Shown here piece by piece: positions 3,884 to 43,985 of a stretch of DNA of 64,000 bases. Every line of letters begins with the position of its first letter. Position 1 is the first letter of the stretch. This DNA is from Entomortierella parvispora E1425 (Eukaryota > Fungi > Mortierellomycota), in contig BQFW01000009.1 in assembly GCA_020891255.1 (NCBI GenBank), positions 1,674,001-1,738,000 of the forward strand, read 5' to 3'. Made by a program: the position numbers and the translations under genes. The notes under the pieces are model-generated. The model worked only from the letters and a program-made list of their open reading frames with translations. It had not been told where the DNA came from and made no database searches.

Positions 3884-4062
3884 CATCCTCAGTTCTGCTC
3901 AAGGGTGTTGTTGAATGGCAAAGGACTCAGATACCAGTTTGCAGGGAATATATCTGAGGACTTGTTGTAGAAGATGACGACCTAGATTCCCAACCCAGCC
4001 CAACTAGCTAGTCACCACTCTGTACTTTGGCCCAAGGTGATGTATCAAAGGAAGTAGCTGTG
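3884..4062 (+). repeat. Degenerate direct repeat, copy 1 (ERO1 3' flank); copy 2 at 5915-6065
   Basis: Shared blocks CATCCTC, AAAGGACTCAGAT, TTTGCAG.GAATATAT, CTAGTCACC.CTCTG and GCCCAAGGTGA.GTATCAAAGG occur in the same order. Copy 1 carries an extra ~28 bp. Confidence 0.85.
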
Positions 4063-4230
4063 TACCCATGGTGCCTGCCTTTATCTTTCATGCCTTCGTG
4101 CAAAAATCAAATTGAAAGAGCTAATCACGTGCAGGGAACATGTCGTGCTTGTCGCGTTGGTGAATTGCTCCCTACATGCATGCGCTGTCATTGCTATTCA
4201 TTCCTGTCCTTCACCCATCAAAACGTACAA

Positions 4231-5754
4231 ATGAATTCCCAGAATGCATTCATTCGGCCGAGTCCTCTCGTCATCCCAGAGCTGTTGCAGCTCATTACAT
4301 CCTTCATGCACAAACGCGACATCCTCTCTTGTCTCCGCGTTAGTCGTATTTGGTACCAGGCTTTCCTTCCTTGTCTCTGGACAGATCTCAGGATTCAGTT
4401 GGAAACAAAAGGATGTCATGGACCGTTTCAACCTGAATGCCGCAAATACTGGCATTGGGTTCGAAAGCTTACTATATTTTGCCCCAACAGCTTCTTGATG
4501 CCATGCAGCACCATCAAATGCCCAAACCTGACGTATCTGGAGATTCATGATAGCTACAGATTCATATACTCAGCTTTCAAGAACGAGAGGTCACTCGCTT
4601 CCTTGATTAGGAGACACCAGCCATCTCTGAGGATCTTTTCTTCCTTTGCCAATGCCACAAACCAATCTCTCGAAGCTCTCTCTGGCTGCGCTAAGCTGGA
4701 GAAACTCCAAATGCACCTTCAATGCTTCAAGACACTGGAGGACTGGTTGAAGTGGTACGGACCCCTTTGGTCCCGTCAGGAGGCCCTCTCCTGGATGGGT
4801 ATGCTCCAAGCTGTAACCACGTCCGAGGATGTTGTTACAGATACTATGAACGCCTTTTCCAACCTTGAAGCAACAGTCATCAAGAGCCTGGATTTGGATC
4901 GCTCTCCGTATCATACGTACATGTCTGCCCTGCCGATTCATGTGATACTCATCATGAAAAGCCCAGAATTGATCAAACTTCGCTGGGACAGCCAAGACGC
5001 GGTTTCCATTCTCTGCAGAATCGCACAAACGATACCGTTTGGTCAGAACCTCAAGGATCTGAGGCTACCTTCTGCGGATATGAAAAGCAACGACCTGAAA
5101 AACCTTCTCACCCGACTCCCTAAACTAGAGCAGCTAGAGATTGAGCATGGCAAAATGGACATGGATGCACTCGGAATTCTCCGGATAGAGTCACCTCGGT
5201 TGTTGACAATATTCAAGGTACTGGGACTCAAGGGCAATATCAGCCGAACCACGGGGACACTGGCACATGCGATTCTAACCTCGATGCCGGGCCTGGAAGA
5301 GTTTTCGATCGATTATATCACCGACGTTGACATTTGCAGGGGAGGCGGTCAATGGGTTTGCTCCGGATTGAAAAAGCTGAGTATGGCTGTCGTCCTTCTT
5401 GAAGAAGGGACGCAGGACATGGTTCTGGATATGCTTGGAAACCTAGAAAACCTTAGAACTCTTGATTTGTCCATGGGGCACATCTACCGCAGCATCCATA
5501 TCGTGCCTACAGGAAAGCACGTAAGGGACTTTGGATTGAGGATATCACTTGGTCGAGGTTTGGATAAATTGAGAATGCTGCATCGATTGGAAACGTACGT
5601 TGGGCCACAATTGCATCGCACATCCCAGTGGAAGGAAGCTGAGGCACGCTGGATACTTCAACACTGGACCAACTTGAGGACACTCCGAGAAGTCTGCGTG
5701 AATGGGGAAGCAAATGACCTTTTGTGGTTTCGCGTATCCGGATACCGACATTGA
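4231..5754 (+). CDS. Intronless F-box domain / LRR (RNI-like) protein
   Basis: SPLVIPELLQLITSFMHKRDILSCLRVSRIWYQAFLPCLW is a typical F-box. It is followed by leucine-rich segments (CPNLTYLEI, LPKLEQLEI, WVCSGLKKLSM, LENLRTLDL). ATG 4231 is preferred over the upstream non-ATG start in the ORF track. Confidence 0.8.
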   Translation: MNSQNAFIRPSPLVIPELLQLITSFMHKRDILSCLRVSRIWYQAFLPCLWTDLRIQLETKGCHGPFQPECRKYWHWVRKLTIFCPNSFLMPCSTIKCPNLTYLEIHDSYRFIYSAFKNERSLASLIRRHQPSLRIFSSFANATNQSLEALSGCAKLEKLQMHLQCFKTLEDWLKWYGPLWSRQEALSWMGMLQAVTTSEDVVTDTMNAFSNLEATVIKSLDLDRSPYHTYMSALPIHVILIMKSPELIKLRWDSQDAVSILCRIAQTIPFGQNLKDLRLPSADMKSNDLKNLLTRLPKLEQLEIEHGKMDMDALGILRIESPRLLTIFKVLGLKGNISRTTGTLAHAILTSMPGLEEFSIDYITDVDICRGGGQWVCSGLKKLSMAVVLLEEGTQDMVLDMLGNLENLRTLDLSMGHIYRSIHIVPTGKHVRDFGLRISLGRGLDKLRMLHRLETYVGPQLHRTSQWKEAEARWILQHWTNLRTLREVCVNGEANDLLWFRVSGYRH

Positions 5755-5914
5755 ATAAAATGTTACATTGCCCAAACTGTTGTTCTAGAGAGGCATTGTA
5801 CTTTCTAATGGATCTTTGAAGAACCTAGTATCATTCGGGCAGCCGGGCTGTATCGTGTATGGTCGTACATTCCGCTTTAGTGCAGGTACCGTGTATCTCC
5901 AACCCCCATGTAAT

Positions 5915-6065
5915 CATCCTCTGTCCAACCCGAAGGTTTGGTTGCTTGGTAAAGGACTCAGATGCCCATTTGCAGAGAATATATTTCAAAACTTGTGTCC
6001 AACCCAACTAACTAGTCACCGCTCTGCGATTTTGCCCAAGGTGAGGTATCAAAGGGGGTAACTGT
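5915..6065 (+). repeat. Degenerate direct repeat, copy 2 of 3884-4062
   Basis: AAAGGACTCAGATGCCCATTTGCAGAGAATATAT (5951) and CTAGTCACCGCTCTG...GCCCAAGGTGAGGTATCAAAGG align collinearly with copy 1. Confidence 0.85.
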
Positions 6066-7581
6066 AGAGCTTTCGCCCTGACTCCTAACCAGATGCTATG
6101 CCCTTGGCATCCACAGAAGCGGCCCCCCACACAACCCACATGCTACTAGCCTAAGTGAAAGGAAAGAGTCGATCGAACTTGACAAGAGAGCTCAAGACCA
6201 ACGAAGGACCGAGGACAGAACTGGGTCCTTGCTTGCGACCGATGGAGAAAGATTTCTTGGTGGCGCTGGTGGCGTGCGGCGGCCATTGTCTTTCATGAAA
6301 GAATGAAAGAAGGACCTGAGGCGACTAAAGGAGAGAGGACGCAGACACACATGGGACTTTTGGTTTTTTCATACGATCAGGAGCTCTTTAGCGCGACAGA
6401 CTTTCTGAGATTCAAAAGGATGTTTTGCTTTTGAAGCAGGAACACAGGAATGCGGGAAGGACCAGCTCTGGAAGAAGACCCTTCAAAGTGTTCATTGAAG
6501 GCAATATTGTCAACACGAAAAAAACAACAACGTTGGTGCAGCACGCTGAATCTTGGCCAATAAACAGGACAACCACGTTATCGCGTTGACCGACGCGTCT
6601 GTTTTAAAAATCCTGATTCAAAGGGCAACCAACGAAGGGACTCTTTCCGAGAAGTTTCTCTGTGGAATAGGGCTGAAGGATCTGCTTGAATTTGAGTTTT
6701 CTTTACAATTCCGACGATCTCGAGAGCTTGCCGGACTAAAGTGCATAAAGAAGAAAGGAAGAAAGGAAGAAAGAGCGGTCAATGAGTACGGCAATTGCGT
6801 TGACAGAGTGAAGGGGTAGTAAGAGTCTTGGCCCGAGTTGCCCGATCAAGAACCCCTGTGCTTCCAGCTGTCCGTCCCGCATCAAAGAGCCTGAAGCGGA
6901 GCGAGATGAGATGAGATGGGGACAAGCGCCACTTTCTAGCATCGGTGTGTGTGTGTGAGCAACGGTGTCTCTTCCTCCAAGAGGTGGAGAGATTAGACAC
7001 AGTTGCTCCTTTTGGTGTTTAGGGCGAGAAGAGGGGTTGTGTTGCAACCGAACTTTGGGAGAGTGCTTTGGTCCTTGGGGGTGCTGTGCCAACGCGAGTG
7101 GAGCCGTGAGTAGGAGGGCAGAAGAGAAAAAAGGGGAGTAGGAGGAGGAGGAGGACAGACAGGGGTTGGTGTTGTGCGCTCGTCTGGCCTGCTTCGTTTC
7201 GTCGTTGTCTGTTCCCGCGTGGCTGCCCGATGCTCACACGCTGGTCTCTGGTCTGCTGCCTCGTGAAAAGAGAACAAAGGTCATTCCTAGTCTGGCTGTA
7301 TGCATTGGACAAGGCGACTCCTTGTGCGCTCATCCCTTCCCTTCCTCGTTGTTCTCTGCCCCATTGCATTGCATTGCCGTCCTTCCTTCCTCTCCCTTCT
7401 TTACCCCCCGCTCCATTATACCCCTTCCTCTTACAAACAGGATTCGCTCTCATCTCCGAATCCTCGCCGATTGTTCGCTTACCGAAACCTACCGGCGGAC
7501 TCTTTTCAGCTCTAAACCCGACAACAAGGACATTCCCATTGACACGTCCACCCAACACGGAACCATCATCTCCGCCAAGCG

Positions 7582-9856
7582 ATGGACATTGAGCGCGATT
7601 CAGACGGTTGTTACTGCCTCCAGGGACCGAGATGTCCGCACTGGATGGCGTCGCAATCCCGCTCAAAGAATCTCTCCAACATGAGCGAAGGCATGCTCCG
7701 TGATGGTAACGGCCTTGAAAGCACCCCTACCACTTCCTGCCCCAATTCCCCTGCCTCCCCTTCCTCTCCCTCCGCTCCTGCCACAAACGTTTGGACCAGT
7801 ACCCGAAGATTGGGCCCACGACCTGATCCTGACAAAGCGTTGTCGTCTTCCTCTTTTATTGGGATACCGCGCTTATTAGACAATGACCACCGTCCCATGG
7901 TCAACGAACTCCAACGAGAGGTATGTTCTCCCTCCCACAAAGGATCAGCTTGACCCGCATACTGAAGTTGTTGCCTTGGCAGATTTTTATTTTCTCTCTC
8001 TCTTTGTTGTGATCGGACACGAGACTAAAACAACAACAACAAACACTCACCTGTTTTTTTTTCTCTTTCTCCCAATGACCTTTGCAGTTGCGCCTGGCCA
8101 TGCTCGAGATTGAAAAGATGGCAAAGTCAAGCAGGGACATGGCAAAATTGAACCAGGATCTGGAAGAATCACGGCTGGTGGCTGTGAGTGAGCAAGCAAG
8201 GACAGCCAAGCGACTGTTGCTGATGACCAGTCAACTGGAATATACGGAACAAAAGCTCTTTAGCCTTTCGCAAGAAGTCGATGATGGGCTCAAGGATTCG
8301 GATCTGTTGAGGATAGAGCGGATCAAACGGGAAGCCCTTCAGGAACGGGAGGACGCTAGTCGACTCAAGATCGAGGCTCTGCAGGATGAACTGCAGGAGG
8401 TTCAAAGGTCAGAGAGAACATTGCAGCAGAAACTCTTGACTACACAGACAAAATACGAAGCCCTGGGGAAAAGACATGACCTACTGAGGAGGCAACAGCA
8501 AGAATCAGACATGGCCAGGGAGAGCAAAGAGGCTGTGGCGTGGCTCAAGGAAACAACTCATCGCCTCATGTCCCCCCCAGAAGGTAGCCTGGGTCAGGCC
8601 ATTCAGCAGGAAAAGGCATCGCAGGGATCTGCGCCGATCAACATCTTGCAGTCGCCCTCGACCTCACCACCTTACCCATCGTCCATCGGAGAACCACCAC
8701 TGGCGGCCCAGAATCAACTGATTGGGTTGATCAAGGAACTGGCCACGACCAACTCGACCCTTCGATCAGAATTGAGCGAATACAGGGACTTGCTACAAGA
8801 TGCCAGGAACGAAGTCATTTCTCTGAGATCGCAGGTTGAGGATTATGAGCAAGGTCATGGATTTGATTGTTGTGGTAGCGGTACGCACGACGACAACAGC
8901 TCAGATGGATACAACGTCTCTAAAGGAACCTGGGGCAATCTCGACCCTTCCCTGATCGCTCTCGATCCAGCTCTTCAGCAACAGCACAAAGATAGCATGG
9001 CACTAACTACGGGATCACCACCACCTTATATGACCACAACCCCTGTGCCACCAACCCAACATCATCTGCACCACCATATCCATCTGCCAGGAGTACGAGG
9101 CAATGTCTTTGGAGAGCTGGAGCGATTGTACAGTCAAAACCATCCACCACCTGTCGGCTCTAGTCGACACAAAGGAAAGTCATCTTCAAGAAAGGACCAC
9201 CATGGTAGCAGTCGACGGTCCGGAAAGGAGTCTCGATCGTCTCATCATCACGGTCGCCATTCAAAACATGATCAGCAACAACCCATCCCTGCCGATCTGA
9301 GACCAGCCGCCGTCACTGTCTCCACCTCGACATCAACTTCTGAAGCGCGTCGAGATGCCGGAATCCAGCCTTCTCCCAAGAAAGTATTGATGTCATCACA
9401 AGGCTCTGGATCGGGTAGCAATGGTAGTAGCAGTAACAGGAGGCCCACAAACCCAGAGAGTATGCTTGAACGGAAACAGCGAAGCCGAAAGTCGCTCTAC
9501 ACGGATGTCGATATGGACATGCTGGATTCTGAGAGTGACCACGAAGATGAACGGGCTACGGGACGCGGACGAAGTAATAGCACGGCAGCCGCAAAACGTA
9601 CCACGAACGATTATGGCGATGACGGAGGACATGAGAGTGCAGACCCGGAGATGCTCTCTGACTTTGGTGATTCGGGAAGCGACCATGAACCCGGCTTTAT
9701 TGCTCAGTTTGCAGAGGTAAGAACAACAGAAAGCAATCTTTTGTTGTCGCAATTGACCCGTTTCCACTGACTAACCATTGTCTTCTTTGGAACATGCAAT
9801 AGACCCTATCTTTCCTTAGTTTCTTTTCTGGACCCATGCAAGGATCACCACCTTGA
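7582..9856 (+). CDS. Uncharacterised coiled-coil / low-complexity protein (3 exons; start and last exon uncertain)
   Basis: ORF 7582-7920, intron 7921-~8088, then a long ORF with heptad-rich LEIEKMAK...LQQKLLTTQTKYEAL and His/Ser-rich tail. Donor GTAAGA at 9717, acceptor at 9801-9802, short last exon TLSFLSFFSGPMQGSPP*. Confidence 0.6.
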
Positions 9857-9945
9857 ACAGCCTCAACGTGGATGAAACTTTTAGATACCCATCCAGACAA
9901 TACAGCAATGTTTTGATAGAGAATATATTTTGCTGATGGACACAG
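9770..9945 (+). repeat. Duplicated segment, copy 1 (last intron end and last exon of the coiled-coil gene; 3' flank of F-box A); copy 2 at 13537-13712
   Basis: Shared TCTTT.GAAC..GCAAT, GACCCATGCA.GGATCAC, GAACAGCCTCA, CATCC.GACAATACA and AGAATATATTTT blocks. Confidence 0.85.
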
Positions 9946-10047
9946 ATCCATTCCTGAAAACCTCTAGGAGAGTCCTTCAGTCCACATTGTTCTATCTGAA
10001 GTGTTGATGTGTGTGTATATATAAGACTACGACTATGAAAAAAAAAA

Positions 10048-12469
10048 CTAAATATCAAGAAGTAGATGTGGGCATTCCGAGTATTGACAAATGATCTTGA
10101 CATCTGGACGCATTGCGCTCATGGCCTCTTGAACAAGATCTGCTTGAACACGGGCCGACTCGAGACTTTCTTTCTGCAAGGAACCGTTCGAGAGCAGAAC
10201 CCTCTCCAATTGCGGCCAAGGCTGGGCACCGTCAGGTCCTGATGCAGCGTATTTCCATAATCCCAAGGTATCCCCATCACTCTCCGTGTGCTTCTGGAGC
10301 AGGTGCAACCGGGCCGAAAAGAGAGCCTCCATGTCCAGGAAGGAGCCACAAAACTCCATATCCATCAACCCGTCAACCTTGGACAAGGCCACAGGGGAGA
10401 CTGGGTTCTCTGGATTCGCTGGAGCCACTGGATCCTCCAGGTCCTCTGCGTCCTCTGCGTCCTCTGCGTCATCTGCGTCATCTAGATTATCTGGTTCCTC
10501 GGGATTCTCTAAATTATCAAAACTGGATAGGAATCTATGTCTGACTTGCTGCCGATGCATCTTTCTTCTACGCTCTTCGACTTGACTGGGTGTGCCAGGA
10601 GCATACGAGCCTGCATCCGGGACGGTCGTGGACCAGGTTCGAACTTTGTCCGCACACTGTATATAACCCTCATAGGCTGACTCATGGCGACGACGGCGAC
10701 CCGCCTGGACTGGACCAGCCGACTGCAGCCTGTAGTCCATGACCCTGCCCCTATGATAGGCGATACCTTGCATCCAGACGAAATCTTGCTTCTGAGGACG
10801 GTCAGAAAAGGTATAAGAGTCTTGAATCGAGGTGTAAATGGCCAAACGTCTCAAATCCTTCAATCGCGTCAGCAGGCAGAGTCCGCTCTCCATTGCGTAC
10901 AATCGACAAGGTACCACGAGCGTCAGATCATCCAGCTGGGGACACACTCGGCCCAGATACCCAAAGATTCGTCTTGTCATGATATCGTTCTCTGCCAAGG
11001 TCAAGTCTTCGGATCCACTGTTCAGATTCAACGTCAATGTCTTGAGTCGACGACAGGACCAAACGCTTGCAGCTGTGGCTCGAAAGGTGCCATCTCCAGC
11101 ATGGGCACGATTACCCCAGAGGACCTCGGTGGACATGGGGATATGGCCCGCCTTGAAATGCTCCAAAGACGGGGACTGGCAGAGCAATTCCCACAAGAGG
11201 ACGTCTCGGCCACGATCCCAATGGGGCCCCTGGGATCCGGCCGTCGAGCTCCCAGGTAGGATCTCGAGGGACGTAAGATGGTTTCCGATTGCTCGACGAG
11301 TCAAGGCCCTCCAGATCGGGTTCGAGGCTTGAACGCAGCTGTAATTGATTCCCCAAGCTGTGACAGACGAAAACAGCTCCACGGGCACCATGGTGGCATG
11401 CTGCCAGCCGCCAGTGGTCATCTTGTCATGACAACTGAAGCTGATCTGCTTCAGTTCTGGGCAGCGGCAGCTAACAAGTCTCCAAAAGAGAGCATCTTGG
11501 ACCCCTCGGACGCTGCCCTCTTGATGGTTATGAAGGAGGGCTGTCGCCATGGACCTCATGGCAGCCGAGGCGAGGGCCTGTGGGTGTAGCGAATCTCGGA
11601 TGTTCACGAGGGAGAGATCGGTGAGGTTCTCGAGGTAGGGAAGATAAGACGAAAAGGCTTTAGGGGAGAGACGAACACCGTTCAAAAAAAGGAGACGGAG
11701 CGCAAGGGGGCCCTCCAGATGATGATTTCGACGTAGGGATTCAACCGTTGGGGGCTGTTGAGCCAGCAGAAATCGGTTGCGGTGATCTTGCAGGGTTCCC
11801 TGATGGCAACTCAACGACAGCGACATGAGGCGGCCGCACTGGGTCAAAATCAATTCCAGCGGGACAGACTTTGATCCGAGTGGCATGTCCATGGACAACT
11901 CTTGCAGCCCTAAATGGATGATGCCCACCCACCATCAAAGATAAAAAAGATACCAATTGGGTTTCAAAAACTTTGAGAGCAAAAGAGGAAAGGGCGCGTG
12001 CATGCGCACGTACATGTGGAGTGCATGTGTTTTTTTTTGTGGAACATGATTAGATTAAAAACTTACGTTCGTAACTGCAGGTTCTGAGTGAACCACAGAC
12101 CATTGGCAGGGCCATCTTGTTCCAAAGCTTGGCCCCGGTGCCAGTAGCCAAGTGTTCCCATGGGCCCAGCTTCAGGTCCACGGTCAAAGCAGTAGCGTGG
12201 GGGAGTTGTCTGGGAAAGGACTTCCATACTTGCGGATCGAGGCCTCTGAGTCGGAGGTGGCCCTGCAACGGCGGTCGGATGATGCAGAACCACAGAGTGC
12301 AGACGTAGACTGCAGAGTTCAGGAGGGTGTGCTGATCCAGAAAAGAAAAAATGTTCATGACGATCTCTGGGATGTCGACAGGGGAAGGTGGGGAAGGTGG
12401 AGAAGGCGTCGTTGCGGTTGTCTTGACGATTTTTTTACCGACAACTCCTTGAAGTACGGTGAGTGCCAT
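10048..12469 (-). CDS. F-box/LRR-like protein, paralog A
   Basis: Exon 1 12469-12067 contains SPVDIPEIVMNIFSFLDQHTLLNSAVYVCTLWFCIIRP (F-box). Intron 12066-11910 (GTAAGT...TTAG). Exon 2 is open to the stop (LQELSMDMP...WSCRRLKTLTL...VCPQLDDLTL...HLLLDI*). Confidence 0.85.
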
Positions 12470-12960: not shown

Positions 12961-13282
12961 AACCAGGGGGAAACGAACGGTCTGAGGCGATAGCCTGGGT
13001 TATTGGATTCCACAGACCGACTCGGACAAGAAACACGCGCCTATTTGTGTTACGTGTGTAAGGAACACACGCGGTAGAAGGGGGAAAAGGGGAAAGCTCG
13101 GCAGCAGGAGGTGTAGGGAACACACGCGGCAGAGAGGGCAAAAGGGGAAAGGTCGGTGGTTGAGGCAGCAGGAGGTAGCTGCTCTGCCATTGGGTGCATC
13201 CTTCAAGATTGACTTCGCTAACCTCATATCAAAAAGTCCTTGATTGGATGCACGCCTCTAGTTCAAGATAGAACCCACACTG

Positions 13283-13376
13283 ATCAAGGCCTTTTCCTGG
13301 GATTGGTCTTGGTCACCATATGGAGAGCATTAAGAATAGGAAGTGGGGAGAGGAGAAGCCGCGGACTCAGATGCGA
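13283..13376. repeat. Conserved non-coding segment homologous to 18826-18925
   Basis: GGAGAGCATTAAGAATAGGAAGTGGGGAGAGGAGAAGCCGCGGACTCAGATGCGA versus GGAGAGTATTAGGCACTGGAAGTGATGAGAGGAGAAGCCGAGGGCTCAAATGCGA. Confidence 0.7.
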
Positions 13377-13536
13377 AAGTGGGGGAGCAGAGGCCCTTAC
13401 GGTGATTTGCGAATCGTCCATTGGTCCCAAATTCATTGCTCAGTTTGCAAAATGTGGGGCAACGGCAGAGGTGAGGACAACGGCAGGAGAACGCTTTGAT
13501 GTGTTTTTTTTTTTTTTTTTTTTTTTTTTTGTAATA

Positions 13537-13712
13537 GACCATTGACTGATCCATGATATCTTTAGAACGTTGCAATGGGTGCTTTCCTTCGTTAGTTCTT
13601 TTTCCGACCCATGCAGGGATCACTACTGCGAACAGCCTCACACCAAGTGAAGCTTCAAGATATCATCCGGACAATACAATTGTGCTTGACATAGAATATA
13701 TTTTAAAGGAAA
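13537..13712 (+). repeat. Duplicated segment, copy 2 of 9770-9945
   Basis: Collinear match to 9770-9945. It lies just downstream of the stop of F-box paralog B. Confidence 0.85.
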
Positions 13713-13738
13713 AAAAGCACAGTATAGAAAGGAATAAT

Positions 13739-16041
13739 TTAAATGTCGATGAGTAGATGGGGGGATTCCGAGTGTTGACAAATGATGTTGATATCCGGGC
13801 GCAGTGCGCCCATGGCCTTTTGAGCAAGGGCGGCCTGGGACTGGACCGACTTGAGTCCTTCTCTCTCTAAGGACCCGTTCGAGAGCAAGATGCGCTCCAA
13901 TCGTGGCCAAGGCTGGGCACCTTCAGGTCCGGGCGCGGCGTCTTTCCACTGTCCCGAAATATCCTCCCACTTGTTCGCCTCCTTCTGGAACCGGTCCAGC
14001 CGGGCCAAAAGGAGAGCCTCCATGTCCAAGAAGGAACCACAAAACTCCATGTCCACCAATCCATCCACCTTGGAGAGGGCCTCAGGAGAGATTGGACTTT
14101 CTGGATCTTCAAAACTGGAGAGGTACTCGTTTGAAGCTTGCTGCTGCTGCATCTTGCGTCGGCGCTCTTCGACTTGACTGGGTGTGCCAGGGGCAAACGA
14201 GCCTGCGTCTGGGAAGGTCGTGGACCAGGTTCGAACCTTCTCCACACAGAGCTTGTAATCCTCATAGGCAGATACACGGCGACAGCGGAGACCCACCTGG
14301 GCCGGACTAACCAGTTGTTGCTCGTAAGCTGTCACGCTGCCCCTGTGATAGGCAATACCTTGCATCCAGACGAAATCTTGCCTTTGAGATTTCTCGAAAG
14401 AGGTATAATAGTCCGGGATCGAGGTGTAAATTGCCAAACGTCTAAGATCCTTCAGCCGCGTCAGCAGGCAGAGTCCACTCTCCATTGCGTATAATCGACA
14501 AGGCACAACGAGCGTCAGATCTTCCAGCTGGGGACAAACTCGGCCCAGATACCCAAAGATTCGTCTAGTCACAATGTTGTTCTCCGCCACGGTCAAGTCT
14601 TCGGATCCACTGTTTAGATTCAACGTCAATGTCTTGAGTCGACGACAACGCCATACATTTGCGGCGCTGGCTCTGAAGGTGCCGTCTCCAGCATGGGCAC
14701 GATTGCCCCAGAGGACCTCGGTCGACATGGGGATATGGCCCGCCTTGAAGTGTTCCAAGGAAGGGGACTCGCGTAGCAATCTCCACAAGAGGTTATCTCG
14801 GTCACGATCCCCAGCGAGGGGTTGGAATCCAGCCGTTGGGTTGCCTGGTAGGATCTCAAGAGACGTAAGTCGATTTTCGACTGCTCGAAGTGTGAGAGCC
14901 CTCCAAGATGGGTTTGAGGCATCAATGCATCTATAGTCCACTCCCCAAGCTGTGACGGACGGAAAGAGTTCCATGGGCACAGTAGCGTAGCCACCAGTTG
15001 TCATCGCATCACGACAATTAAAGCAGATCCGCTCCAGCTCTGGGCACTGGCGGCCCACAACTGTCCAAAAGGACGCATGCGGGAGGAGAAGAGCACTCTC
15101 TTGCTCCGGATTTGCTGCAGTGTCAGCCAAGTGCAGCAAGAGGGCCGCTGCAGTTGTTGCGTTCATAGCGGCGGTGACGAGGGCTTGTGGATGCCATGAA
15201 TCTCGGATGTCCAAGAGGGACAAATCCGTCAGGTGCCTGAGAAAAGGCATGTAGGACAAAAAAGCTTTGGGGGAGAGACGGACACTGCTTAAAAAAAGGA
15301 GACGGAGCGGGAGAGGCTGTTTGAGATGATTATTCTGATGCAAGGATCCAACCGTTGGGGGATGCAGGACATGTGGAAATCGATTGCGGCGCTCTTGCAG
15401 GGACCCTTGAAGGCAGCCAAGTGACAGAGACAAGAGACGGGGGCACTGGGTCAGAATCAGCTCCAGTGGGGCGGATTTTGCTCCGAGCGGCATGTCCATG
15501 GACAACTCTTGAAGCCCTAATGAGGATACCAAATAAGAGCAAAGAGAGCAAAGATATCAACAAGGTTAAAACTTTGTGGGCAAGAGAGCGCACGCGTATG
15601 TATCTATGTTTACGGTGTTCATAGCAACAACTTACGTTCATAGATGGAAGTTTTGAGTGAACGACAGACCAAGGGCATGGCGAGCTGGTTCCAAAGCTTG
15701 CTTTCGTATCCAAAAGTCGAATGTTTCCATGGGCCAAACTTCAGGCCCACGAACAGCGAGTCGGCCTGGAGGAGTCTTTTGCGAAAACACTTGTACGCCT
15801 TTGAGCCAACGCTTCTCAGCTGAAGGTGATGACGCAACAATGGTCGAGCGATACAAAACCACAGAGTGCAGACGTGGGCTGCAACGGTCAAGAGGGTGTA
15901 CTGGTCGAGAAAGGAGAAGATGTGCATGACGATCTCTGTGATCTCAAAAGGGGAGGGTGATTGTTTTTTACTTGGACTAAGCGTCTTTGTTGTGGTGGCG
16001 TGCTCTTTCTTGGCCGTGCCACCGAAGATTCTTCGAAGCAT
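13739..16041 (-). CDS. F-box/LRR-like protein, paralog B
   Basis: Exon 1 from MLRRIFGG contains SPFEITEIVMHIFSFLDQYTLLTVAAHVCTLWFCIARP. Intron 15635-15517 is at the same position as in A. Exon 2 has long identical stretches with A (SPSLEHFKAGHIPMSTEVLWGNRAHAGDGTFRA; RRIFGYLGRVCPQL; LCLLTRLKDLRRLAIYTSI). Confidence 0.85.
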
Positions 16042-16049
16042 AGTGGCGA

Positions 16050-16167
16050 TGGTGGTGGTGGATGTGGTGGTGGATGTGGTGGTGGATGTGGTGGTGGATG
16101 TGGTGGTGGTGGATGTGGTAGAAGTAAAGGTAGAGGTAGAAGCAGAGGTAGTGGTGGTAGTGGTAGA
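16050..16167. repeat. (GGTGGTGGATGT)n / GGT microsatellite upstream of paralog B
   Basis: Directly visible 12-bp and 3-bp tandem units. Confidence 0.9.
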
Positions 16168-16700
16168 GGCAATGGTGTCGGAGAGGATGTCAATGGTTGT
16201 CGAAAGGATGAGAGACGGAGTGCACGAAGAGAGAAAAGGACGAAGAGAGAAACGAGAAAACGAGACTAGACTTACTTTTTGTTTGCACGGTGTGACATGG
16301 TGACAGGGAAAGAGAAAATAGAACGGGAAAAGAGGGACCATTGCCATTGCCCGAGCACCGGCGCGAGACGCAAAGATAAAAATGAACAAGCCATGGTCGT
16401 GGGGCAGTCGCTGCGAGATGGGCCAATAGATCGGAAAAAAAAAAAGAAAAGGAAGAAATAATAAGAGCCTGCACTGCATCCACATATGAAAAAGAAGAGA
16501 AAAAAAAGGCAAAGGTGGAAAGCGCTGACACAATCAAACAACATATCTGACCCGACGGGCTTGTTTGAAGACTTGACGACGACAATCTATTGAGGGTGCA
16601 ACAAGGGGCAGGCGCTGAAAGGGCAAAAGACCGTATGTGTCACCACAACATGCGAAAAAAACGTGCACGCAGACCGACTCAACAGCTTGAGGGAAGCAGA

Positions 16701-18821
16701 TCAGACATCCACAAGAAAATGGGATTTCAAAGAGCAGGGGCAAGAGGTATTGATGCCAAGGTCGCAATTCTCGCAGCGGCAGCTGGACAAACCTAATGTC
16801 TGAGCCTTTTCAAGACCAGTGACCCGCCCATTGGAAAGGATCAGCTGCTCCATCTTGGGCCATGGTCGCTGCGCCTTGCATCCTTTGGATATAGCCTTGT
16901 CGCTTATCTCAAAAAGTCTTGCTCAAAAGTACGCCTCTAATTCATGATAGGTTCCACAGTAGCCCAGATTCTCAAGTGCATCCACCATGCAGATATTAAA
17001 AGGGGGTTTTAAACCATATTCTGTTGTCGTTCGGTAACTGTTTCCATCCTGCTCTTGCAGCATTCTCGCCCTTAGAACCTCCAATGGCGCATCGTTGGGG
17101 ATCCATGATTGCACCTTTGGTTAAGAGTTTGACCGAGCCTCGACCATTTCTAGACAATCCTTCAAGTGATCTTGTAAAGACGACATTCTTCCGCTGGAGC
17201 TGCCAATGTTTGTGATTCCAGCGCCCTCTTGGCACATCCCGCGAGCGCACGAAAGGCCAAAGTCGCCATCGTGGTTGTAGAAGTAGGCGTGGGTATCTGA
17301 GCCACCAACTTTGCGGCTGACTTCTTGCTCGTCTCTTCAGCTCCTTGGACCCAAGTAAAGTCTTTTCTCCGGTGCACCTCCCCTGGAGAATACTCATTCC
17401 AGTAAAACGCTGTATGAAGTGCCAGTCGCTTCAGATCCGATAGCCGGGTCAGCAAGCGCAGGCCATGTCCAGCTTGAACAATCGAGATTCGATCTTGAGG
17501 GACAGATCTTGTAACCGGGGGCACACGCGCGGGTGATGTAACTGAAAATACGCCAAGCCAATTAAAGTCGTCTGGGCCATGTTGAGAGACAGGATCTGCA
17601 GACCTCTGTAGGACCACATCTTTGCGAGGTTGTGATCTTCAGGTCTAGAACGGTGATTGTCCCACAGACCAAACGTCGACATGTTCATGTCCCCGGCCTT
17701 GAAATGGATCAACAAGGGTGACGAGGACAGAAATCGGTACAAGATGGCGTCTCGCGTTGATCCTGATATAGGTGCCCAATTGCTGACTGAAGGAGTTCCA
17801 AGACTGTCAGTCAGTTCTCAACCGAGCGAATGCGCAAGTCAGACCATGTCCTGTCGCCATGTGCGACTCGAGTGAAGTCGATCCCCCATCTTTGAATGGA
17901 TGGAAACAACTTCACAGGGACGCCGCAACCAGTCGTGCCGGCTGTGGTGTACTGAATGGTGTGTAGCAGAGGGCAGGAGCGAGCTACATTGACCCAAAGT
18001 TCTCGACCGGCATCTTCGTCAGAATGGTTGTCCTTCCAACTGTTCTCCTGTCCATTATGAGGTGTTGCTTGGGAGGACAGCTTGCCATCCCAAATATCTT
18101 GCAGGGAGAGCTCCTTCAGGTTGCCGCACCTTTGAGATGGGACACAGGCACTCCAGGGGTCGCATGCAGACTGTGGAGTCTCAGAGCCTGCAAAGGCAGA
18201 GGGATTTCGCTCCTGTTACTGCTGCCCTTGCTGATCAAGGGCCTAGTTGTGGTAAAAGGGATGATCCATTGCAGTGCGCTCATGGAAAGACAAAAGACAG
18301 ACCAGGTTCGGGCATTGCTGAAGAATCAATTGGGAGAAAACTTCATTCATTCCGAGGGGAATGTCCAATGAGAGTTCTTGCATCCCATCCCTAATGTCGT
18401 AGGTAAAGAAATCGACTCGTGTCAGAGAGTAAGTGTGTCATTGAATGGTACACCAGAAGGGTATGGCCATGATGGACTTACGTAGCAATCGATTGGCCTT
18501 CAATGCATCGTGGACCATAGGCAGAACCTTTTGCTTCGAAACTCTTTGCTCTCCGCTCTCGGTCTAGTCTTCATTTGGACGCCAAGGGCATGGAGGCCAA
18601 CAGTCAGTTGGGTGGCCCCATGAAGCTTCCTCCTGTGGAAGTTTCTCCTGACTTTTGGACTGTAGCTGTCGATGTGGAGGTGGCGTGTGAAGAAAAGTTG
18701 AGCAACCTGGCGCCATTGCCGACAGACCCGACCAGCAACGAACTTGAGTGAGAATTGGTCCAAGGACGAAAAGATGATTGTCAGGATCTCGTTGATCTCA
18801 ACAGGGAAGGGAGGCGACCAT
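16701..18821 (-). pseudogene. Decayed third F-box/LRR paralog (C)
   Basis: It starts PVEINEILTIIFSSLDQFSLKFVAGRVCRQWRQVA (F-box) and keeps the same intron (donor 18481, acceptor ~18391). Homologous blocks fall in different frames: VLPMVH vs ALPMVC, MQELSLDIP vs LQELSMDMP, SSSPLLIHFKAG, RVCPRLQDLSL, LLTRLSDLKRLAL, LGYCGTYHELEAYF, PWPKMEQLILSNG and HFLVDV*. There are several frameshifts and stops. Confidence 0.8.
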
Positions 18822-20199
18822 GAGTATCAAAACCTTTGACTGGCCTTGATCCTGGTCGTCGTTGGATGGTGGAGAGTATTAGGCACTGGAAGTGATGAGA
18901 GGAGAAGCCGAGGGCTCAAATGCGACTGACCGCAAGGGTCGCAGACGGCCAAACAAAAAAAAGGGATGTGACGCCAAGCACTGCCATTTTCCTTTGGGCC
19001 CTGGAGGCTGAGCGATCCATTGCAAATCCAGGAAAAGGCCTTGTCTGCTTGCCTGCAGACAGCTCGGAATCGTAGGATAAGTGGCTATGGTAATTCCTCC
19101 ACCTGGGTAGGACGCGTCTCTCTACATCTGATACGCCCAATCATAGCCAGTCATGTTGTGAATGCAAGGCGTCTGGGAAAATGTCTCAGCTGGTCCTGGC
19201 GCGTCCGAAGGCCCGAAAGATAGAGAGATATCATGGTATCCCCTTCTCCCGCAATTACAACTGTAGTTTTTTTTTTCCCAGGGGTGATTTCCTTGTTCAC
19301 GCGGGATACATCCAAGGGTAGTCCAGTATGCACTGTACAACATCCAGCATCTAAGCCGTTTCTTTTTCAGGAAGTGAGCGCCCCCGGGTCTGCATTGCAT
19401 GATAAACTACAGTAATGCAGGACCGGATCGGGCCTTCAACACCTGGCGCTCTTCTTTGTCTCTTTGTCCACTTTTGGACGTCTTGTATTCTACAGGGGAA
19501 CGGCGCTCATGTCAATGCACTTACCCTGTCTCCCAAAAGCGGAATAGGACAAAAGTCGTGGTTGGCTGGCACCTTCCGTTTGCGGTGCAATCGTAGGGTT
19601 GTGCAGACGTTACCTCGCCCCCTCGCCCTCGTCTTCTATGTATATACTCAGCTTCGAGAGAGTTGACTCAATTGAGCACAATATATACCAGGAGGATCGG
19701 GATAATCACATTTTAGCACATTTTGCGTGGGCTCCTTCGCATCCAGACCCCACTTTTACCCTGGACGCTCGACTTGTTTCACACAAAATCCCACTAGGAC
19801 GTTAGAGAACGTGCAGCGGAAAAGATTATCCAAGGGATTGTCGCCATCTGATTCTAGAGCACAAAGCATGCATATGCTTTTCAATCGATTTTCTTTCTTC
19901 GTGACCATGAGTTGGCTGCCTGCGAAATAGATACAGCAAGGATAGCACGACTCTTCTACCCAGCCCAAAGGAACATAGGCCACCATTTTTAAGACTCAGC
20001 AAAGGCTCAATTGGGTATGCACCATGGTCGCGTTCAGAAACTCAGGAGCATGGGTCCAGGGTGCAAGTGGGCTGTAGCATCGAATGCGGTGTATTCTATC
20101 AAGACTGTTATCGATTGAGGACCTTCAGTCGATTCTTGGTTATTGAGAAAGGACTAGAAGATGTGAGAAACGGGACACGGTCATCTTGGACTCGACAAG

Positions 20200-20683: not shown

Positions 20684-21038
20684 ATCCGCTTTCCCCCTAC
20701 ATTAAGCGGACCCGGTCAGATAATATGTCCGACATTTCCCCCTACCTTCTTCAGCAGTTCTCACAGCCACTTGCTCTTCCACTAGCAAGTGTACTACAAT
20801 AAAAGAGGAAGATATTTTAACTTTGCATATTCGATATGACCAACTGCGGCCACAGATGCATGAACACCGTTGTTTGTGGGACCCAAGTCCTGCAATACCT
20901 CCAAGAGGAAAGCTGTACAAATTTTGATCAGCAGTCCATGTATTCTCAGCCAAATAATAGTACTCGGTTTGGTTGAAGTGGTATCATGGTGGTATCATGG
21001 TGGTATCATGGTGTATTAGGATATGACAAAAAAAAGTT

Positions 21039-22586: not shown

Positions 22587-23564
22587 GATTCAAGGAAAGG
22601 AGAAAGAGCGAACGGGACGAGGTTTTTTTTCTCTGAATTTACCTAGAGAAGTATCTGGCCCACAGTCACAGGTTCCTGAGCTTTACTCTGGGGGAGGGAG
22701 AGAGAGAAGCAGTTGACAGAAGTAGCCAGCAGAGAGGCAAGAAGGAATGAAGAAGGTTGACAGTGGCACTTGAGCCGAAAAAGACGGGGGAACAGGCAAG
22801 AATGATGGAAGGGCAGAAGGAAGGAAGGAACGAAGGAAGAAGGTGAGGGCGAGGGGCAAAAGAGAAGAGAAGAGAAGAGAAAAGATGCACGGCGTCCTCT
22901 CTGGAATTGAAGTGCCGCCCAGCATCGTTTACCGAGGAATGAGAGCGATCGCTATTTTCTTGAGTTGGTTCCCGAGGAATGGATCCTTCCATTCTGTCCT
23001 TCTCTCTCGACAGTCCTCATCACTTCACCTGATTTGTCTGCCCTTCTTCCTTTTACTCCCTTCCTTCTTTCCGTCTCTCCTTCCTTCCTTTCTTCCTTCC
23101 TTCTTTCTTTTTTCTCTTTTCCTTGTGGAGATTGGGCCACTGACCCCTACCAGAACTATTACAACAGGTGAAGATCCGGACACTGCAGTATCTTCTCTCT
23201 TGCCTTCATGGACCTGCCGGATAACCATCCCAGCTTTTCTTCTTCCTTCATTCTGAACAGTTTCCACAATTGTTTGCAGCTCCATTGGGCAATGCCTTAA
23301 AAAAACGACAAAAAAAAAAAGAGGGTTTAAAACTCCCCCGGAAGAGACGCCCGCACGATCCTCGACCGACAGTCCCATGTTTTGAACAAGCGATCTCTTC
23401 TAACTACGGCAAGGTCAGTGCCCCACTGCCCTATTTCGGCTAAGTATCTCCTCCGAAAGGAGGCGTGGTAATGCTATCAAGAGGCAACTCTTGGTTATCA
23501 GCCGACAAGCGTATCTCAGTCTGGTTGAAGCGATATTACGGTATATTAGGGTAAGGAGAGCTTT

Positions 23565-33154: not shown

Positions 33155-33155
33155 G
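33106..33155. repeat. Compound (TGA)n(TGT)n microsatellite
   Basis: Directly visible trinucleotide runs. Confidence 0.95.
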
Positions 33156-41971: not shown

Positions 41972-42536
41972 ATGAGACTCAAGTATCTTCGCACAAAGCC
42001 TCGCAAGGTGATTGAGGCGAGCCCTTGTATCGCCGAGATGGGTGCCATGATCCAGTGCTGGACCGCTTCCGGTGTCGATGACGCAAAGTGCATGCAATCC
42101 GCAAAGATGCTGGCCGACTGCATGAAGAACTTGGTATGACCATAACGACCCTTTCTTGTCTCGACAGCCTCTCTGGAACTACTTTTCAGGACAGGGGCAA
42201 GGATAAGGAAAAGGAGTGATTTCTGGAGAGATATCTCAAGGACATTAGATCATGGATGGCCAACTGCAGGATCTGATAGTTAGAGGCAACTCGCTGGAGA
42301 ACCACGGCGAATATCGTTCGATCCAGGAACGACGCCACCAATATTTCCGGACAATCGGAACCAACAAAGCAAATGCCATGCTGAAGATTAACTACTCAGG
42401 ACTCCCTCTCTGCCTGTTTATTGTTCAAAGTGAGGCTGGAACTAACGCAATTTCGTTTTCATGTTAATAGCCCACCAAGACCAAGCAGGTCAACACCGTC
42501 AACTACCATCTTGCTCGCCTTCAGAAGCAACTTTAA
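41972..42536 (+). CDS. MRP10: Mitochondrial small-subunit ribosomal protein mS37 (twin Cx9C, CHCH)
   Basis: MRLKYLRTKPRKVIEASPCIAEMGAMIQCWTASGVDDAKCMQSAKMLADCMKNL, intron 42134-42470, then PTKTKQVNTVNYHLARLQKQL*. Twin Cx9C and the C-terminal NYHLARL motif are present. Missed by the ORF track. Confidence 0.85.
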
Positions 42537-42767
42537 AGGAGGCAGATCGATTACAGCGGCAACCGACCCCCTACCCTTCTCCATTCATTATTTCTTTGCT
42601 TTCTCGCTCTCATTCTCGTAGACAACATTCACAAATACATTGTACCATAGTGCCACTATCTAAAGTTCTGGGGTTGACGCGGTTATCAGAAGTGGCTCCG
42701 ATGAAGAAGCGAAAGAGAGTGTCGTGGGAATGAAGCTCGATCGCACTTCATCAAGAGTGTGAACGAA
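42497..42767 (+). repeat. Direct repeat, copy 1: MRP10 last-exon end plus 3' UTR; copy 2 at 43793-43985
   Basis: ACTACCATC.TGCTCGCCTTCAGAAGCAACTTTAAAGGAG is nearly identical in both copies, followed by TTGTACCAT, TCTAAAGTT.TGGG.TTGAC.CGG and CGATGAAGAAGCG. Confidence 0.9.
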
Positions 42768-43044
42768 TGCGTTAATCGTGTCAGTTGCTGCCAAGAGTGA
42801 TATCAGCAATACTCAGAGGAGCTTATCGAATGCAGCGCAACGCAAACAATCAGCCTACAAGCCCACTACCTTGCAAGAATATAAGGGGATCATGAGTGCG
42901 GCTGAAGTTCGTCCTTCACTACTTTAGTTCTTTAGTTCATAGTCTCCGACCTCTCGCCATTCGGACTCATGTCGCCTGCACTCACATCGTCTCTAGTGCG
43001 ACCGGGCAAAGAGAATAGAGTCGTCCAAACACGACAATACCGAT

Positions 43045-43714
43045 ATGGCCACAGTTGCGAAAGTCTCACCTTTGCATCTCACACTGGGAAGCATCGTGCT
43101 GCCTCTCCGCAAACCATCTGACGCACGAGTCTTTATATCTCTTGACTTTTTAGCACCCGCTCATTTGTGATAGAAGCTGAATCCTCAACTACAAGGGCCT
43201 TTTCCCTGAAGAACAATGGGATGAAATTGTTTCATGTCAATCAAAAGTACATCCTGCGCCTGGCCCATCGATTGCAAATGCATCGTTCAATGACAGACTT
43301 GACCATTCCTTCTGAAGACGTCTTTTTCCTGCGAGCTTGTTCTGGATACATTTCGATCATGGTAAGCTGCTTCGGACGTAACATCGTCCTTCCTCTGCCA
43401 CAAAGAAGCCTGCAACTCACGAGAAATATCTTGATCACCCTAATAGGGCACGGCTGTACGACCGTAACATAAGTTCATTTGGCGTTGCCTAGTTTGGCGA
43501 GGTCTTTTGGGGTGGAAGGTCTTAGCCCTTGATCATGGAGCTGCTAGACGATATTGATAACGTGTTCACAATCGATGGAGAGAAGTGCTGCCTTGACTCG
43601 ACACGGCGCAAAAACTCGAGTCGTTCTTTGAATAATAATGATGGTTCAATTACGCTGGAGAAGGTGAAGTCAAGCAAAAGTTTGTATCTGAGTGGCCTCC
43701 AAGACGTTGCTTGA
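43045..43714 (+). pseudogene. Probable decayed F-box/LRR gene remnant
   Basis: MATVAKVSPLHLTLGSIVL...DARVFISLDFL, then PLI in a shifted frame, resembles the local F-box consensus SPL..PEI....L...C.RV...W...F.P.LW. Downstream Leu-rich fragments are broken by stops. Similarity was judged by eye only. Confidence 0.45.
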
Positions 43715-43792
43715 GTCCCCTCTCAGTGGCAGCCCAGAACTGCAATACTTCTCCTGCTGACTAGGGTCTGCGACGTCCGAGCACTTCTGCAA

Positions 43793-43985
43793 CGTCGACT
43801 ACCATCCTGCTCGCCTTCAGAAGCAACTTTAAAGGAGACTGATAGTTTACAGAGGAGCAGACCATTGTTTTCTATATTGTACCATTACTGTACCACAGTC
43901 TAAAGTTATGGGCTTGACACGGGTGTCGATGAAGAAGCGTGTGAAGGCGTTGTGGAAGTGGACAAGATCGTACCTTGCATGAACG
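43793..43985 (+). repeat. Direct repeat, copy 2 of the MRP10 3' end (with an internal deletion)
   Basis: CGTCGACTACCATCCTGCTCGCCTTCAGAAGCAACTTTAAAGGAG reproduces the coding end and stop codon of MRP10. Confidence 0.9.

What the first reader, a model, noticed from the sequence alone, without database searches (positions are those of the whole stretch)
3884..43985. Recurring architecture: F-box genes sandwiched between duplicated 3' ends of the neighbouring gene (three independent sites in 64 kb)
Seen in sequence: [ERO1 3' flank]-F-box-[copy], [coiled-coil gene last exon]-F-box A-[copy]-F-box B, and [MRP10 last exon + UTR]-F-box relic-[copy]. The duplicated flanks are ~150-270 bp, unrelated to each other and unique to their site, so they are not LTRs of one element. 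No transposase, RT or terminal inverted repeat is visible. Established: F-box/LRR genes are greatly expanded and turn over fast in Mortierellaceae. Inference: either F-box cassettes arrive by a route that makes very long target-site duplications just behind transcribed genes, or local tandem duplications repeatedly break in the neighbour's 3' end and one F-box copy is later lost. Either way the repeats give a built-in route for pop-out or amplification by unequal recombination, a possible birth-and-death mechanism for this family.
Basis: partly seen in the sequence, partly recalled or inferred. Interest (0 to 1): 0.75.

Follow-up and report, generated by a model that had tools for sequence, protein, structure and literature searches.

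The report
Three unrelated repeats, not one mechanism
The three "F-box genes between duplicated neighbour ends" are three different ordinary things: a pair of fragments of a scattered repeat, a plain tandem gene duplication followed by a deletion, and a small local duplication with no F-box gene inside. There is no shared new mechanism.

Summary
The window is from Entomortierella parvispora (contig C9). All three direct-repeat pairs exist, but they do not share an architecture.

- **Site 1 (ERO1/F-box F1).** The arms are not ERO1's flank and are not unique. They are truncated ends of a dispersed 1.7-2.1 kb non-coding repeat with at least 9 long copies plus fragments. In the shared core each arm is closer to copies elsewhere (84-92%) than to the other arm (77%). 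An orthologous contig from a relative has ERO1 and the next gene but no F1.
- **Site 2.** This is a genuine [coiled-coil gene 3' end]-F-box A-[copy]-F-box B. It is an ordinary tandem duplication of a ~5.5 kb unit with a mapped junction near 13380. A ~1.9 kb deletion later removed most of one copy of a third F-box gene, C, now a pseudogene. A and B are closer to each other than to the relative's single ortholog.
- **Site 3.** The MRP10 3' end is duplicated 1.3 kb downstream. The enclosed DNA shows no F-box or LRR similarity by Pfam, a local F-box profile, tblastn, or genome and protein searches.

Interest is low.

The parts
2263..3802 (+). ERO1 gene, last two open frames (EMPS_07176); stop at 3800-3802
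   Evidence: Pfam PF04137 E 8e-74. 99% to the NCBI E. parvispora protein. The ortholog in L020 aligns up to 3804.
3884..4061 (.). Site 1 left arm: truncated terminal fragment of a dispersed 1.7-2.1 kb non-coding repeat
   Evidence: 13 genomic matches. 84-92% to other copies in the 73-bp core vs 77% to the right arm.
4231..5754 (+). F-box/LRR gene F1, intact and intronless (open frame from 4012; likely ATG at 4231)
   Evidence: Pfam F-box-like E 2e-5 plus LRR hits. Translation. Nearest paralogs 46-53% aa. Absent from the orthologous locus L020.
5915..6167 (.). Site 1 right arm: a second, longer terminal fragment of the same dispersed repeat. The well-conserved core is 5999-6167, with weak similarity further into the element interior.
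   Evidence: 84-90% to 10 other copies over 156-171 bp. Multiple alignment.
7253..9770 (+). Neighbouring 'coiled-coil' gene (no Pfam domain); main ORF 8082-9770
   Evidence: No Pfam family. 80% nt and 89% aa to the ortholog in L020.
9633..9931 (.). Site 2 original arm: last ~135 coding bp of the coiled-coil gene plus ~160 bp downstream. This is the left end of the tandem unit.
   Evidence: Alignment; blastn. The genome search returned only the query itself; it did not list even the diverged local copy.
10048..12469 (-). F-box gene A (two open frames, 10048-11928 and 12050-12469)
   Evidence: 65% aa to B. Local F-box profile E 1.5e-34.
13223..13379 (.). End of tandem copy 1. 13223-13279 is a remnant of a copy of F-box C (equals 16903-16958). 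13297-13379 is a copy of the sequence upstream of C (equals 18845-18931). The duplication junction lies at about 13380.
13383..13704 (.). Site 2 copy of the coiled-coil 3' end (start of tandem copy 2); frame broken by indels
13739..16533 (-). F-box gene B (open frames 13739-15532 and 15619-16533)
   Evidence: Pfam F-box-like E 3e-6.
16704..18826 (-). F-box gene C, a pseudogene (at least 4 in-frame stops and 2 frameshifts)
   Evidence: tblastn alignments. F-box profile E 1.3e-29.
21037..24958 (-). FUT8-like tandem gene pair (21037-22403 vs 23563-24958, 74%). A non-F-box tandem duplication of similar divergence.
41972..42535 (+). MRP10-like CHCH gene: exon 41972-42139 and last exon about 42470-42535
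   Evidence: Pfam CHCH E 1e-3. Reading of the sequence.
42440..42690 (.). Site 3 original arm: end of the intron, last exon, stop codon and ~155 bp downstream of MRP10
   Evidence: The only genomic matches are itself and the local copy.
42691..43735 (.). Site 3 enclosed DNA: non-coding spacer with no F-box/LRR similarity. Longest open frame 108 aa.
43736..43925 (.). Site 3 copy of the MRP10 3' end. A decaying pseudo-exon: every coding difference changes the amino acid.

Best explanation
The three sites have three separate, ordinary origins.

**Site 1.** The intact F-box gene F1 lies between two same-orientation, truncated copies of the end of a dispersed non-coding repeat of 1.7-2.1 kb. That repeat has internal tandem repeats and at least 9 long copies. 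The arms are repeat-family DNA, not a duplicated ERO1 flank. F1 is a presence/absence difference between species at this locus.

**Site 2.** A ~5.5 kb unit was duplicated head-to-tail after the split from the lineage of metagenome contig L020. The unit held the coiled-coil gene's 3' end, the ancestor of F-box A and B, F-box C, and ~110 bp upstream of C. The mechanism (unequal crossing-over or replication error) is inferred. The junction near 13380 joins the unit's end to its start. A later ~1.9 kb deletion removed most of the C copy in the first unit, and the surviving C has decayed to a pseudogene. The left breakpoint inside the neighbour's coding end is harmless, because the original gene stays whole; that is why such breakpoints survive (inference).

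**Site 3.** A ~200-250 bp piece holding the MRP10 3' end was copied 1.3 kb downstream into the MRP10-aldolase spacer and is decaying. No gene, F-box or otherwise, is enclosed.

The common process is local duplication plus deletion, acting on F-box and non-F-box genes alike.
For: **Site 1**
- The left arm has 13 genomic matches.
- Both arms align to the end of a repeat whose reference copy is L010:3006-5117. That repeat has 28 matching pieces, including at least 9 long copies at 81-90%.
- Neighbours of the copies are unrelated genes: lipase, transporter, P450, GNAT.
- Core identity of the left arm is 84-92% to most other copies (73% to the L019 fragment) and 77% to the right arm.
- In the orthologous contig L020, ERO1 aligns to 3804 and homology resumes at 7253. 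The 1.1 kb between has no F-box and no repeat match.

**Site 2**
- Homology is collinear: 9633-12390 vs 13383-15959.
- Left of the junction, 13297-13379 equals 18845-18931 at 80%.
- 13223-13279 equals 16903-16958 inside C.
- C carries stops and frameshifts.
- K2P distances are A-B 0.31, A-O 0.49 and B-O 0.47.

**Site 3**
- The 10 longest open frames give no Pfam hit, even with the E-value ceiling raised to 10.
- A local F-box profile finds A, B, C and F1 (E<=1e-28) and nothing in 42536-43800.
- tblastn with the window's F-box proteins finds nothing there.
- The DNA and the longest frame are single-copy in the genome.
- No homologue turned up in the 5.8-billion-protein word search.
- No further MRP10 homology exists downstream.

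**General**
- A FUT8-like tandem pair of equal divergence lies in the same window.
Against: - The two site 1 arms, and the fragment in L009, share about 60 bp of subterminal sequence (3884-3946) that blastn does not find in the other copies. An old local duplication of one resident repeat fragment cannot be excluded there.
- Two fragments of a roughly 15-copy family lying 2 kb apart is not chance, so some local event did link them to F1.
- The origin of the site 3 duplicate is unresolved, because no orthologous MRP10 locus could be fetched. It could be an insertion with duplication or a small dispersed copy.
- The C' remnant match (57 bp, 75%) is only moderately significant (E 3e-5 in a small search space).
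- The genome-wide enrichment test was not run.
Confidence: 0.75

Rival explanations
1. All three sites are the same process at different stages of decay. A tandem duplication of [neighbour 3' end + F-box gene] was followed by loss or total decay of one F-box copy. Sites 1 and 3 would be old a-b-a-b arrays reduced to a-b-a.
For: - Site 2 shows exactly this path, including a mapped deletion of an F-box copy.
- The site 1 arms share a subterminal extension of about 60 bp.
- F-box genes evolve very fast here. The orthologues are 43-62% aa identical, against 89% for the neighbouring gene. An old relic could therefore be unrecognisable.
Against: - Site 3 encloses no F-box-like sequence by four independent tests. 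No second copy of the enclosed DNA follows the right arm.
- The site 1 arms belong to a dispersed family, and in the core they are closer to distant copies than to each other.
- Nothing resembling F1 follows the right arm.
Confidence: 0.15
2. F-box cassettes insert behind transcribed genes by a mechanism that duplicates 150-270 bp of the target, that is, very long target-site duplications.
For: - F1 is absent from the orthologous ERO1 locus of a relative.
- The site 3 arms are single-copy apart from each other.
Against: - The site 1 arms are not target DNA. They are a multi-copy repeat, are absent from the relative's locus, and lie outside ERO1's conserved flank.
- The site 2 junction joins the upstream flank of F-box C to the coiled-coil 3' end, which is the signature of a tandem duplication and not of an insertion.
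- Site 3 holds no cassette.
- No terminal inverted repeats were found at sites 1 and 3, no transposase or RT domain in the frames scanned, and no poly(A) tract after F1's stop codon.
- F1's closest paralogue is only 53% identical, so there is no recent donor.
Confidence: 0.04
3. The dispersed repeat itself moves or duplicates F-box genes. Ectopic recombination between its copies, or re-integration of an excised circle by a single crossover into a resident copy, would place an F-box gene between two same-orientation repeat fragments that come from different copies.
For: - The repeat's end lies 150-230 bp upstream of F-box starts at C12:478896, a C7 fragment, a C15 pseudogene and C1:2547139-2548518.
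- A 640-bp piece 'F1 3' end + right arm' is copied 67 kb away at 89% identity.
- The arms are not each other's closest relatives, as expected if they come from two different copies.
Against: - The F-box-adjacent copies share homology beyond the repeat end, so they may trace to one or two ancestral associations spread by ordinary segmental duplication.
- Six or more copies have unrelated neighbours.
- The orientation of the repeat relative to the gene differs between F1 and the other loci.
- No junction or circle data exist.
Confidence: 0.06

Closest known systems
Tandem-duplication birth-and-death evolution of F-box gene families (plants, Caenorhabditis, mammals; PMC3030570, PMC8665587, PMC3984280)
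   Same: Site 2 is a head-to-tail array of three F-box genes (A, B and pseudogene C). It shows a lineage-specific duplication, a deletion of one copy, pseudogenisation and very fast protein divergence.
   Different: Nothing essential differs. The lineage (Mortierellaceae) is one for which my library search found no paper on F-box expansion.
Gene flanked by fragments of a dispersed repeat or transposable element (solo or truncated copies)
   Same: The site 1 arms are two truncated ends of one dispersed 1.7-2.1 kb repeat family, in the same orientation.
   Different: The family could not be classified. It has no coding capacity by Pfam and its boundaries are fuzzy. I found no clear LTR or Helitron-type ends when reading the aligned termini by eye.
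Target-site duplications of transposons and LINE-mediated retrocopies
   Same: Same-orientation short repeats bracket an intronless gene.
   Different: The arms are multi-copy repeat DNA and not the target. They are 67-77% alike. There is no poly(A) tail, no terminal inverted repeats and no donor copy. The arm lengths are far above typical target-site duplications (own knowledge).

Membership tests
Tandem segmental duplication (site 2) | Collinear head-to-tail homology across the unit | tested here: met
   9633-12390 vs 13383-15959 at 74-78% nt and 65% aa.
Tandem segmental duplication (site 2) | A single junction joining the unit's distal end to its proximal end | tested here: met
   13297-13379 equals 18845-18931. 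It is followed immediately at 13383 by the copy of 9633 onwards.
Tandem segmental duplication (site 2) | Paralogues closer to each other than to the single orthologue in an outgroup | tested here: met
   K2P A-B 0.31 vs A-O 0.49 and B-O 0.47. Caveats: the outgroup contig ends inside the F-box gene, and gene conversion is not excluded.
Target-site duplication of an inserted cassette (sites 1 and 3) | The arms derive from single-copy target DNA that is present once at an empty orthologous site | tested here: not met
   Site 1: the arms are multi-copy and absent from the relative's locus. Site 3: no orthologous locus was available.
Target-site duplication of an inserted cassette (sites 1 and 3) | The arms are each other's closest relatives | tested here: not met
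   Site 1 core: 77% between the arms vs 84-92% to other copies. Site 3: the arms are each other's only relatives, so the feature is met there.
Target-site duplication of an inserted cassette (sites 1 and 3) | A mobile-element signature inside (transposase, RT, terminal inverted repeats, poly(A) tail) | tested here: not met
   Pfam finds only F-box/LRR in F1 and nothing in the site 3 frames. There are no convincing inverted repeats and no poly(A) tract after F1's stop.
F-box/LRR gene (site 3 enclosed DNA, 42691-43735) | F-box domain (PF12937/PF00646-like) | tested here: not met
   Pfam gave no hit even with the E-value ceiling at 10. The local F-box profile has no hit in the region, while the four real domains score E<=1e-28.
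F-box/LRR gene (site 3 enclosed DNA, 42691-43735) | LRR or other similarity to F-box family members of this genome | tested here: not met
   tblastn with five F-box protein pieces finds nothing there at E<=10. The longest frame matches only itself in the genome and nothing in the protein database.
HDV-like ribozyme repeat cassette (lead from earlier notes s1-180475 and s1-180478) | Match to an Rfam delta-type ribozyme model | tested here: not met
   No Rfam match in the window, in the arm region, in 11 loci carrying the repeat, or in the repeat end at E<=5. A genome search with RF00094 gave only one sub-threshold hit elsewhere.
LTR or other classified transposable element (the dispersed repeat) | Defined termini, target-site duplications, coding capacity or paired LTRs | tested here: inconclusive
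   The right end is sharp and common to the copies. The left boundary is fuzzy. The ORFs have no Pfam domain. The copies are not arranged in pairs.

The most novel reading that the evidence does not exclude
A dispersed non-coding repeat of E. parvispora is preferentially associated with F-box gene borders. It would mediate their relocation or duplication by ectopic recombination, or by excision and re-integration. F1, lying between two fragments of that repeat, would be one product, and the displaced 'F1 3' end + arm' fragment 67 kb away would be another.
Probability: 0.07. Interest if true: 0.55.

Novelty: already known. Interest (0 to 1): 0.2.

Why it matters
The window instead shows the textbook route (tandem duplication, deletion, pseudogenisation) plus repeat-derived flanks.

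Three things are still useful.
- A cleanly mapped example of duplication followed by loss in a Mortierellaceae F-box array.
- A measure of how fast these genes diverge: orthologues are 43-62% aa identical, next to a neighbour at 89%.
- A pointer to an unclassified dispersed repeat that often sits next to F-box genes.

Tried and rejected
- **Genome-wide flank-repeat test.** I did not try to get the sequence another way.
- **Orthologous loci through the look-up of encoding contigs.** The targets were Gryganskiella, M. polycephala and a JGI contig. One metagenome scan gave a usable orthologous contig for sites 1 and 2 (L020) but none for site 3.
- **Retrocopy idea for the intronless F1.** Rejected. 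There is no poly(A) tract after the stop, and the listed paralogues have similarly long open frames without internal stops.
- **Whole-gene MRP10 duplicate at site 3.** Rejected. Only the 3' end is repeated.
- **tRNA, snRNA or ribozyme identity of the site 1 arm.** No tRNA and no Rfam family.
- **The dispersed repeat as simply an F-box promoter.** Rejected as a full explanation, because most copies abut unrelated genes.
- **Background rate.** In eleven 10-kb loci, no short isolated same-strand pairs (60-400 bp, 0.4-8 kb apart) occur outside the repeat's own internal repeats. Site 3 is therefore a real, rare event and not noise.
- **Literature support for 'F-box expansion in Mortierellaceae'.** Not found. 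The genome itself has at least 150 PF12937 matches above the cut-off, from 532 candidates.
Full report
**Source and setting.** The window is G000:C9:1674001-1738000 of a 38.9 Mb, 20-contig assembly. The ERO1 open frame is 99% identical to NCBI protein EMPS_07176 of Entomortierella parvispora, on a contig of the same length as C9. The genome paper is PMC8759367. The genome holds at least 150 PF12937 (F-box-like) matches above Pfam's cut-off, from 532 first-look candidates.

**Are the repeats there?** Yes. A self-blastn of the window (agreeing) gives these pairs:
- 3884-4061 vs 5915-6065 (67%, 178 bp, E 9e-14).
- 9784-9931, 10049-10415 and 10517-12390 vs 13559-13704, 13740-14106 and 14109-15959 (74-78%).
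- 42481-42559 vs 43777-43855 (84%, E 2e-16).
- 21037-22403 vs 23563-24958 (74%), which is a pair of FUT8-like genes and not F-box genes.
- 13321-13376 vs 18870-18925 (82%).

In eleven other 10-kb pieces of this genome, short isolated same-strand pairs do not occur outside one repeat family's internal repeats. The pairs are therefore real events and not background noise.

**Site 1 (ERO1 - F1).**
- F1 (open frame 4012-5754, likely ATG at 4231) is an intact F-box/LRR gene.
They are not. The left arm has 13 matches in the genome.
- Both arms align to the end of a dispersed repeat. Its reference copy is L010:3006-5117 (C12:476605-478716).
- The genome holds at least 9 long copies of 1.5-2.1 kb at 81-90% identity, plus fragments.
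- The repeat has internal tandem repeats. Its ORFs have no Pfam domain, and it gives no tRNA or Rfam match.
- Genes next to the copies are unrelated: lipase, EamA-type transporter, P450, GNAT. It therefore behaves as a dispersed, unclassified element.
- In the 73-bp core shared by all copies, the left arm is 84-92% identical to most other copies and only 77% to the right arm. The right arm is at most 84% identical to any other copy. That is a star-like relationship through the family, not a recent local duplication.
- One caveat remains. The two arms, and a fragment in L009, share about 60 further subterminal bases that blastn does not find in other copies. An old local duplication of a resident fragment is therefore not excluded.

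**An orthologous locus for sites 1 and 2.**
- One metagenome scan found contig Ga0302182_10003251 (L020, 7.6 kb).
- L020 1-1152 aligns to window 2663-3804 (ERO1, 83%). L020 2248-5396 aligns to 7253-10378 (the next gene and the start of the F-box array, 80%).
- Between these blocks L020 has 1.1 kb where the window has 3.4 kb. That 1.1 kb has no F-box similarity and no match to the dispersed repeat.
- The conserved ERO1 downstream sequence ends by about 3846, before the arm starts at 3884.
- F1 is thus a presence/absence difference between the two species, and the arms are not ancestral ERO1 flank.
- F1's closest paralogues are only 46-53% identical. That is about the divergence of true orthologues in this family. 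Gain and loss therefore cannot be told apart, and no recent donor exists.

**Site 2 (coiled-coil gene - A - copy - B).**
The repeat starts about 135 bp inside the 562-codon ORF that ends at 9770 and runs through its downstream sequence.
- The site is a plain tandem duplication within a three-gene array. A is 10048-12469, B is 13739-16533 (65% aa to A), and C is 16704-18826 (about 30% aa).
- C carries at least four in-frame stops and two frameshifts.
- The junction can be read. 13297-13379 is homologous to 18845-18931, just upstream of C (80%). From 13383 the copy of 9633 onwards begins.
- The unit was therefore about 5.5 kb: coiled-coil 3' end, the A/B ancestor, C, and about 110 bp upstream of C.
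- In the first unit only a 57-bp remnant of C survives, 13223-13279 equal to 16903-16958. This implies a deletion of about 1.9 kb.
- Using the single orthologue O in L020 as outgroup, K2P distances are A-B 0.31, A-O 0.49 and B-O 0.47. The duplication therefore followed the species split, unless gene conversion has acted.
- Protein identities are A-B 65% and O-A/B 43-62%. The neighbouring gene is 89% identical between species.

**Site 3 (MRP10).**
- The end of the intron, the last exon with its stop codon, and about 155 bp downstream (about 42440-42690) recur at about 43736-43925.
- Every coding difference in the copy changes the amino acid, so it is a decaying pseudo-exon (my reading of the sequences).
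- The arms and the enclosed DNA are otherwise single-copy in the genome.
- The claimed F-box relic was tested five ways:
  - tblastn with five F-box protein pieces from the window found nothing at E<=10.
  - Pfam on the ten longest open frames found nothing, even with the E-value ceiling raised to 10.
  - A local profile built from five F-box domains recovers A, B, C and F1 at E<=1e-28 and nothing in 42536-43800.
  - The longest frame (108 aa) matches only itself in the genome.
  - The same frame matches nothing in the 5.8-billion-protein word search.
- No other part of MRP10 is repeated downstream, and no inverted repeats mark the ends.
- The enclosed DNA is best read as plain spacer between MRP10 and the gene that starts about 44409, which I read as an aldolase from its translation; Pfam did not confirm it.
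- How the small copy arose cannot be decided without an orthologous locus.

**Synthesis.**
This is the known mode of F-box family turnover in plants, nematodes and mammals (PMC3030570, PMC8665587, PMC3984280).
- The same window holds a non-F-box tandem pair of the same divergence. The process is therefore not F-box-specific.
- Breakpoints in a neighbour's 3' end are what one expects to survive, because the original gene stays whole (inference).
- The long target-site-duplication idea is contradicted at sites 1 and 2 and has no cargo at site 3.

**Not done.**

**Left open.**
- The dispersed repeat's end lies 150-230 bp upstream of F-box starts at four further loci.
- A 640-bp 'F1 3' end + right arm' piece sits 67 kb away at 89% identity.
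- Repeat copies are 91-96% alike while the adjoining F-box sequence is mostly 60-80% alike.
- This may reflect one or two ancestral associations spread by segmental duplication, or a real link between the repeat and F-box gene movement. I rate the latter at about 7%.
- Earlier notes on delta-ribozyme repeats beside F-box genes (s1-180475, s1-180478) could not be connected to this repeat with Rfam.

Noticed in passing
L010:3006-5117 (C12:476605-478716) and copies on C2, C7, C8, C14 (x4), C15, C9, C1; window 3884-4061 and 5915-6167: An unclassified dispersed non-coding repeat of 1.7-2.1 kb with internal tandem repeats (spacings of about 146 and about 410-440 bp). It has at least 9 long copies at 81-90% identity, with a sharp common right end and a fuzzy left end.
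   Followed up: partly
C12:478896-480281, L016:5282-5416, L018:5229-6155, C1:2547139-2548518: The end of that repeat lies 150-230 bp upstream of an F-box gene, fragment or pseudogene at four loci. The repeat parts are 91-96% alike, while the adjoining F-box sequence is mostly 60-80% alike, which is an unexplained step in divergence.
   Followed up: partly
L009:4547-5184 (C9:1746646-1747283): A 640-bp fragment, 89% identical to window 5499-6140, lies about 67 kb downstream. It holds the last 84 codons of F1 (96% aa) plus its downstream arm, with no rest of the gene.
   Followed up: partly
window 21037-22403 and 23563-24958 (- strand): A tandem pair of FUT8-like (PF19745) genes at 74% identity, the same divergence as F-box A/B. 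Here the homology stops at the stop codons.
   Followed up: partly
window 10048-16533 vs L020:5066-7627: The F-box orthologue in the related metagenome contig is only 43-62% aa identical to A and B. The adjacent coiled-coil gene is 89% identical, so this F-box lineage evolves very fast.
   Followed up: yes
window 43811-43855 vs 42515-42559: Within the MRP10 3'-end copy, the last ~45 bp around the stop codon differ at only one or two positions. The 35 bp before them are heavily diverged. This could be chance, conversion, or a conserved 3'-end signal.
   Followed up: no
L010:1249-2479 and 8762-10000 (C12:474848-476199 and 482361-483720): A 1.35-kb direct repeat (87%) with copies 7.5 kb apart brackets the dispersed repeat, an intact F-box gene and an SDR gene. 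Weaker copies lie at C12:326378 and C7:1582067.
   Followed up: partly
window 12766-12956: A short tandem repeat (unit about 70 bp, A-rich) lies in the diverged region upstream of F-box A, where similarity to the B unit is lost.
   Followed up: no
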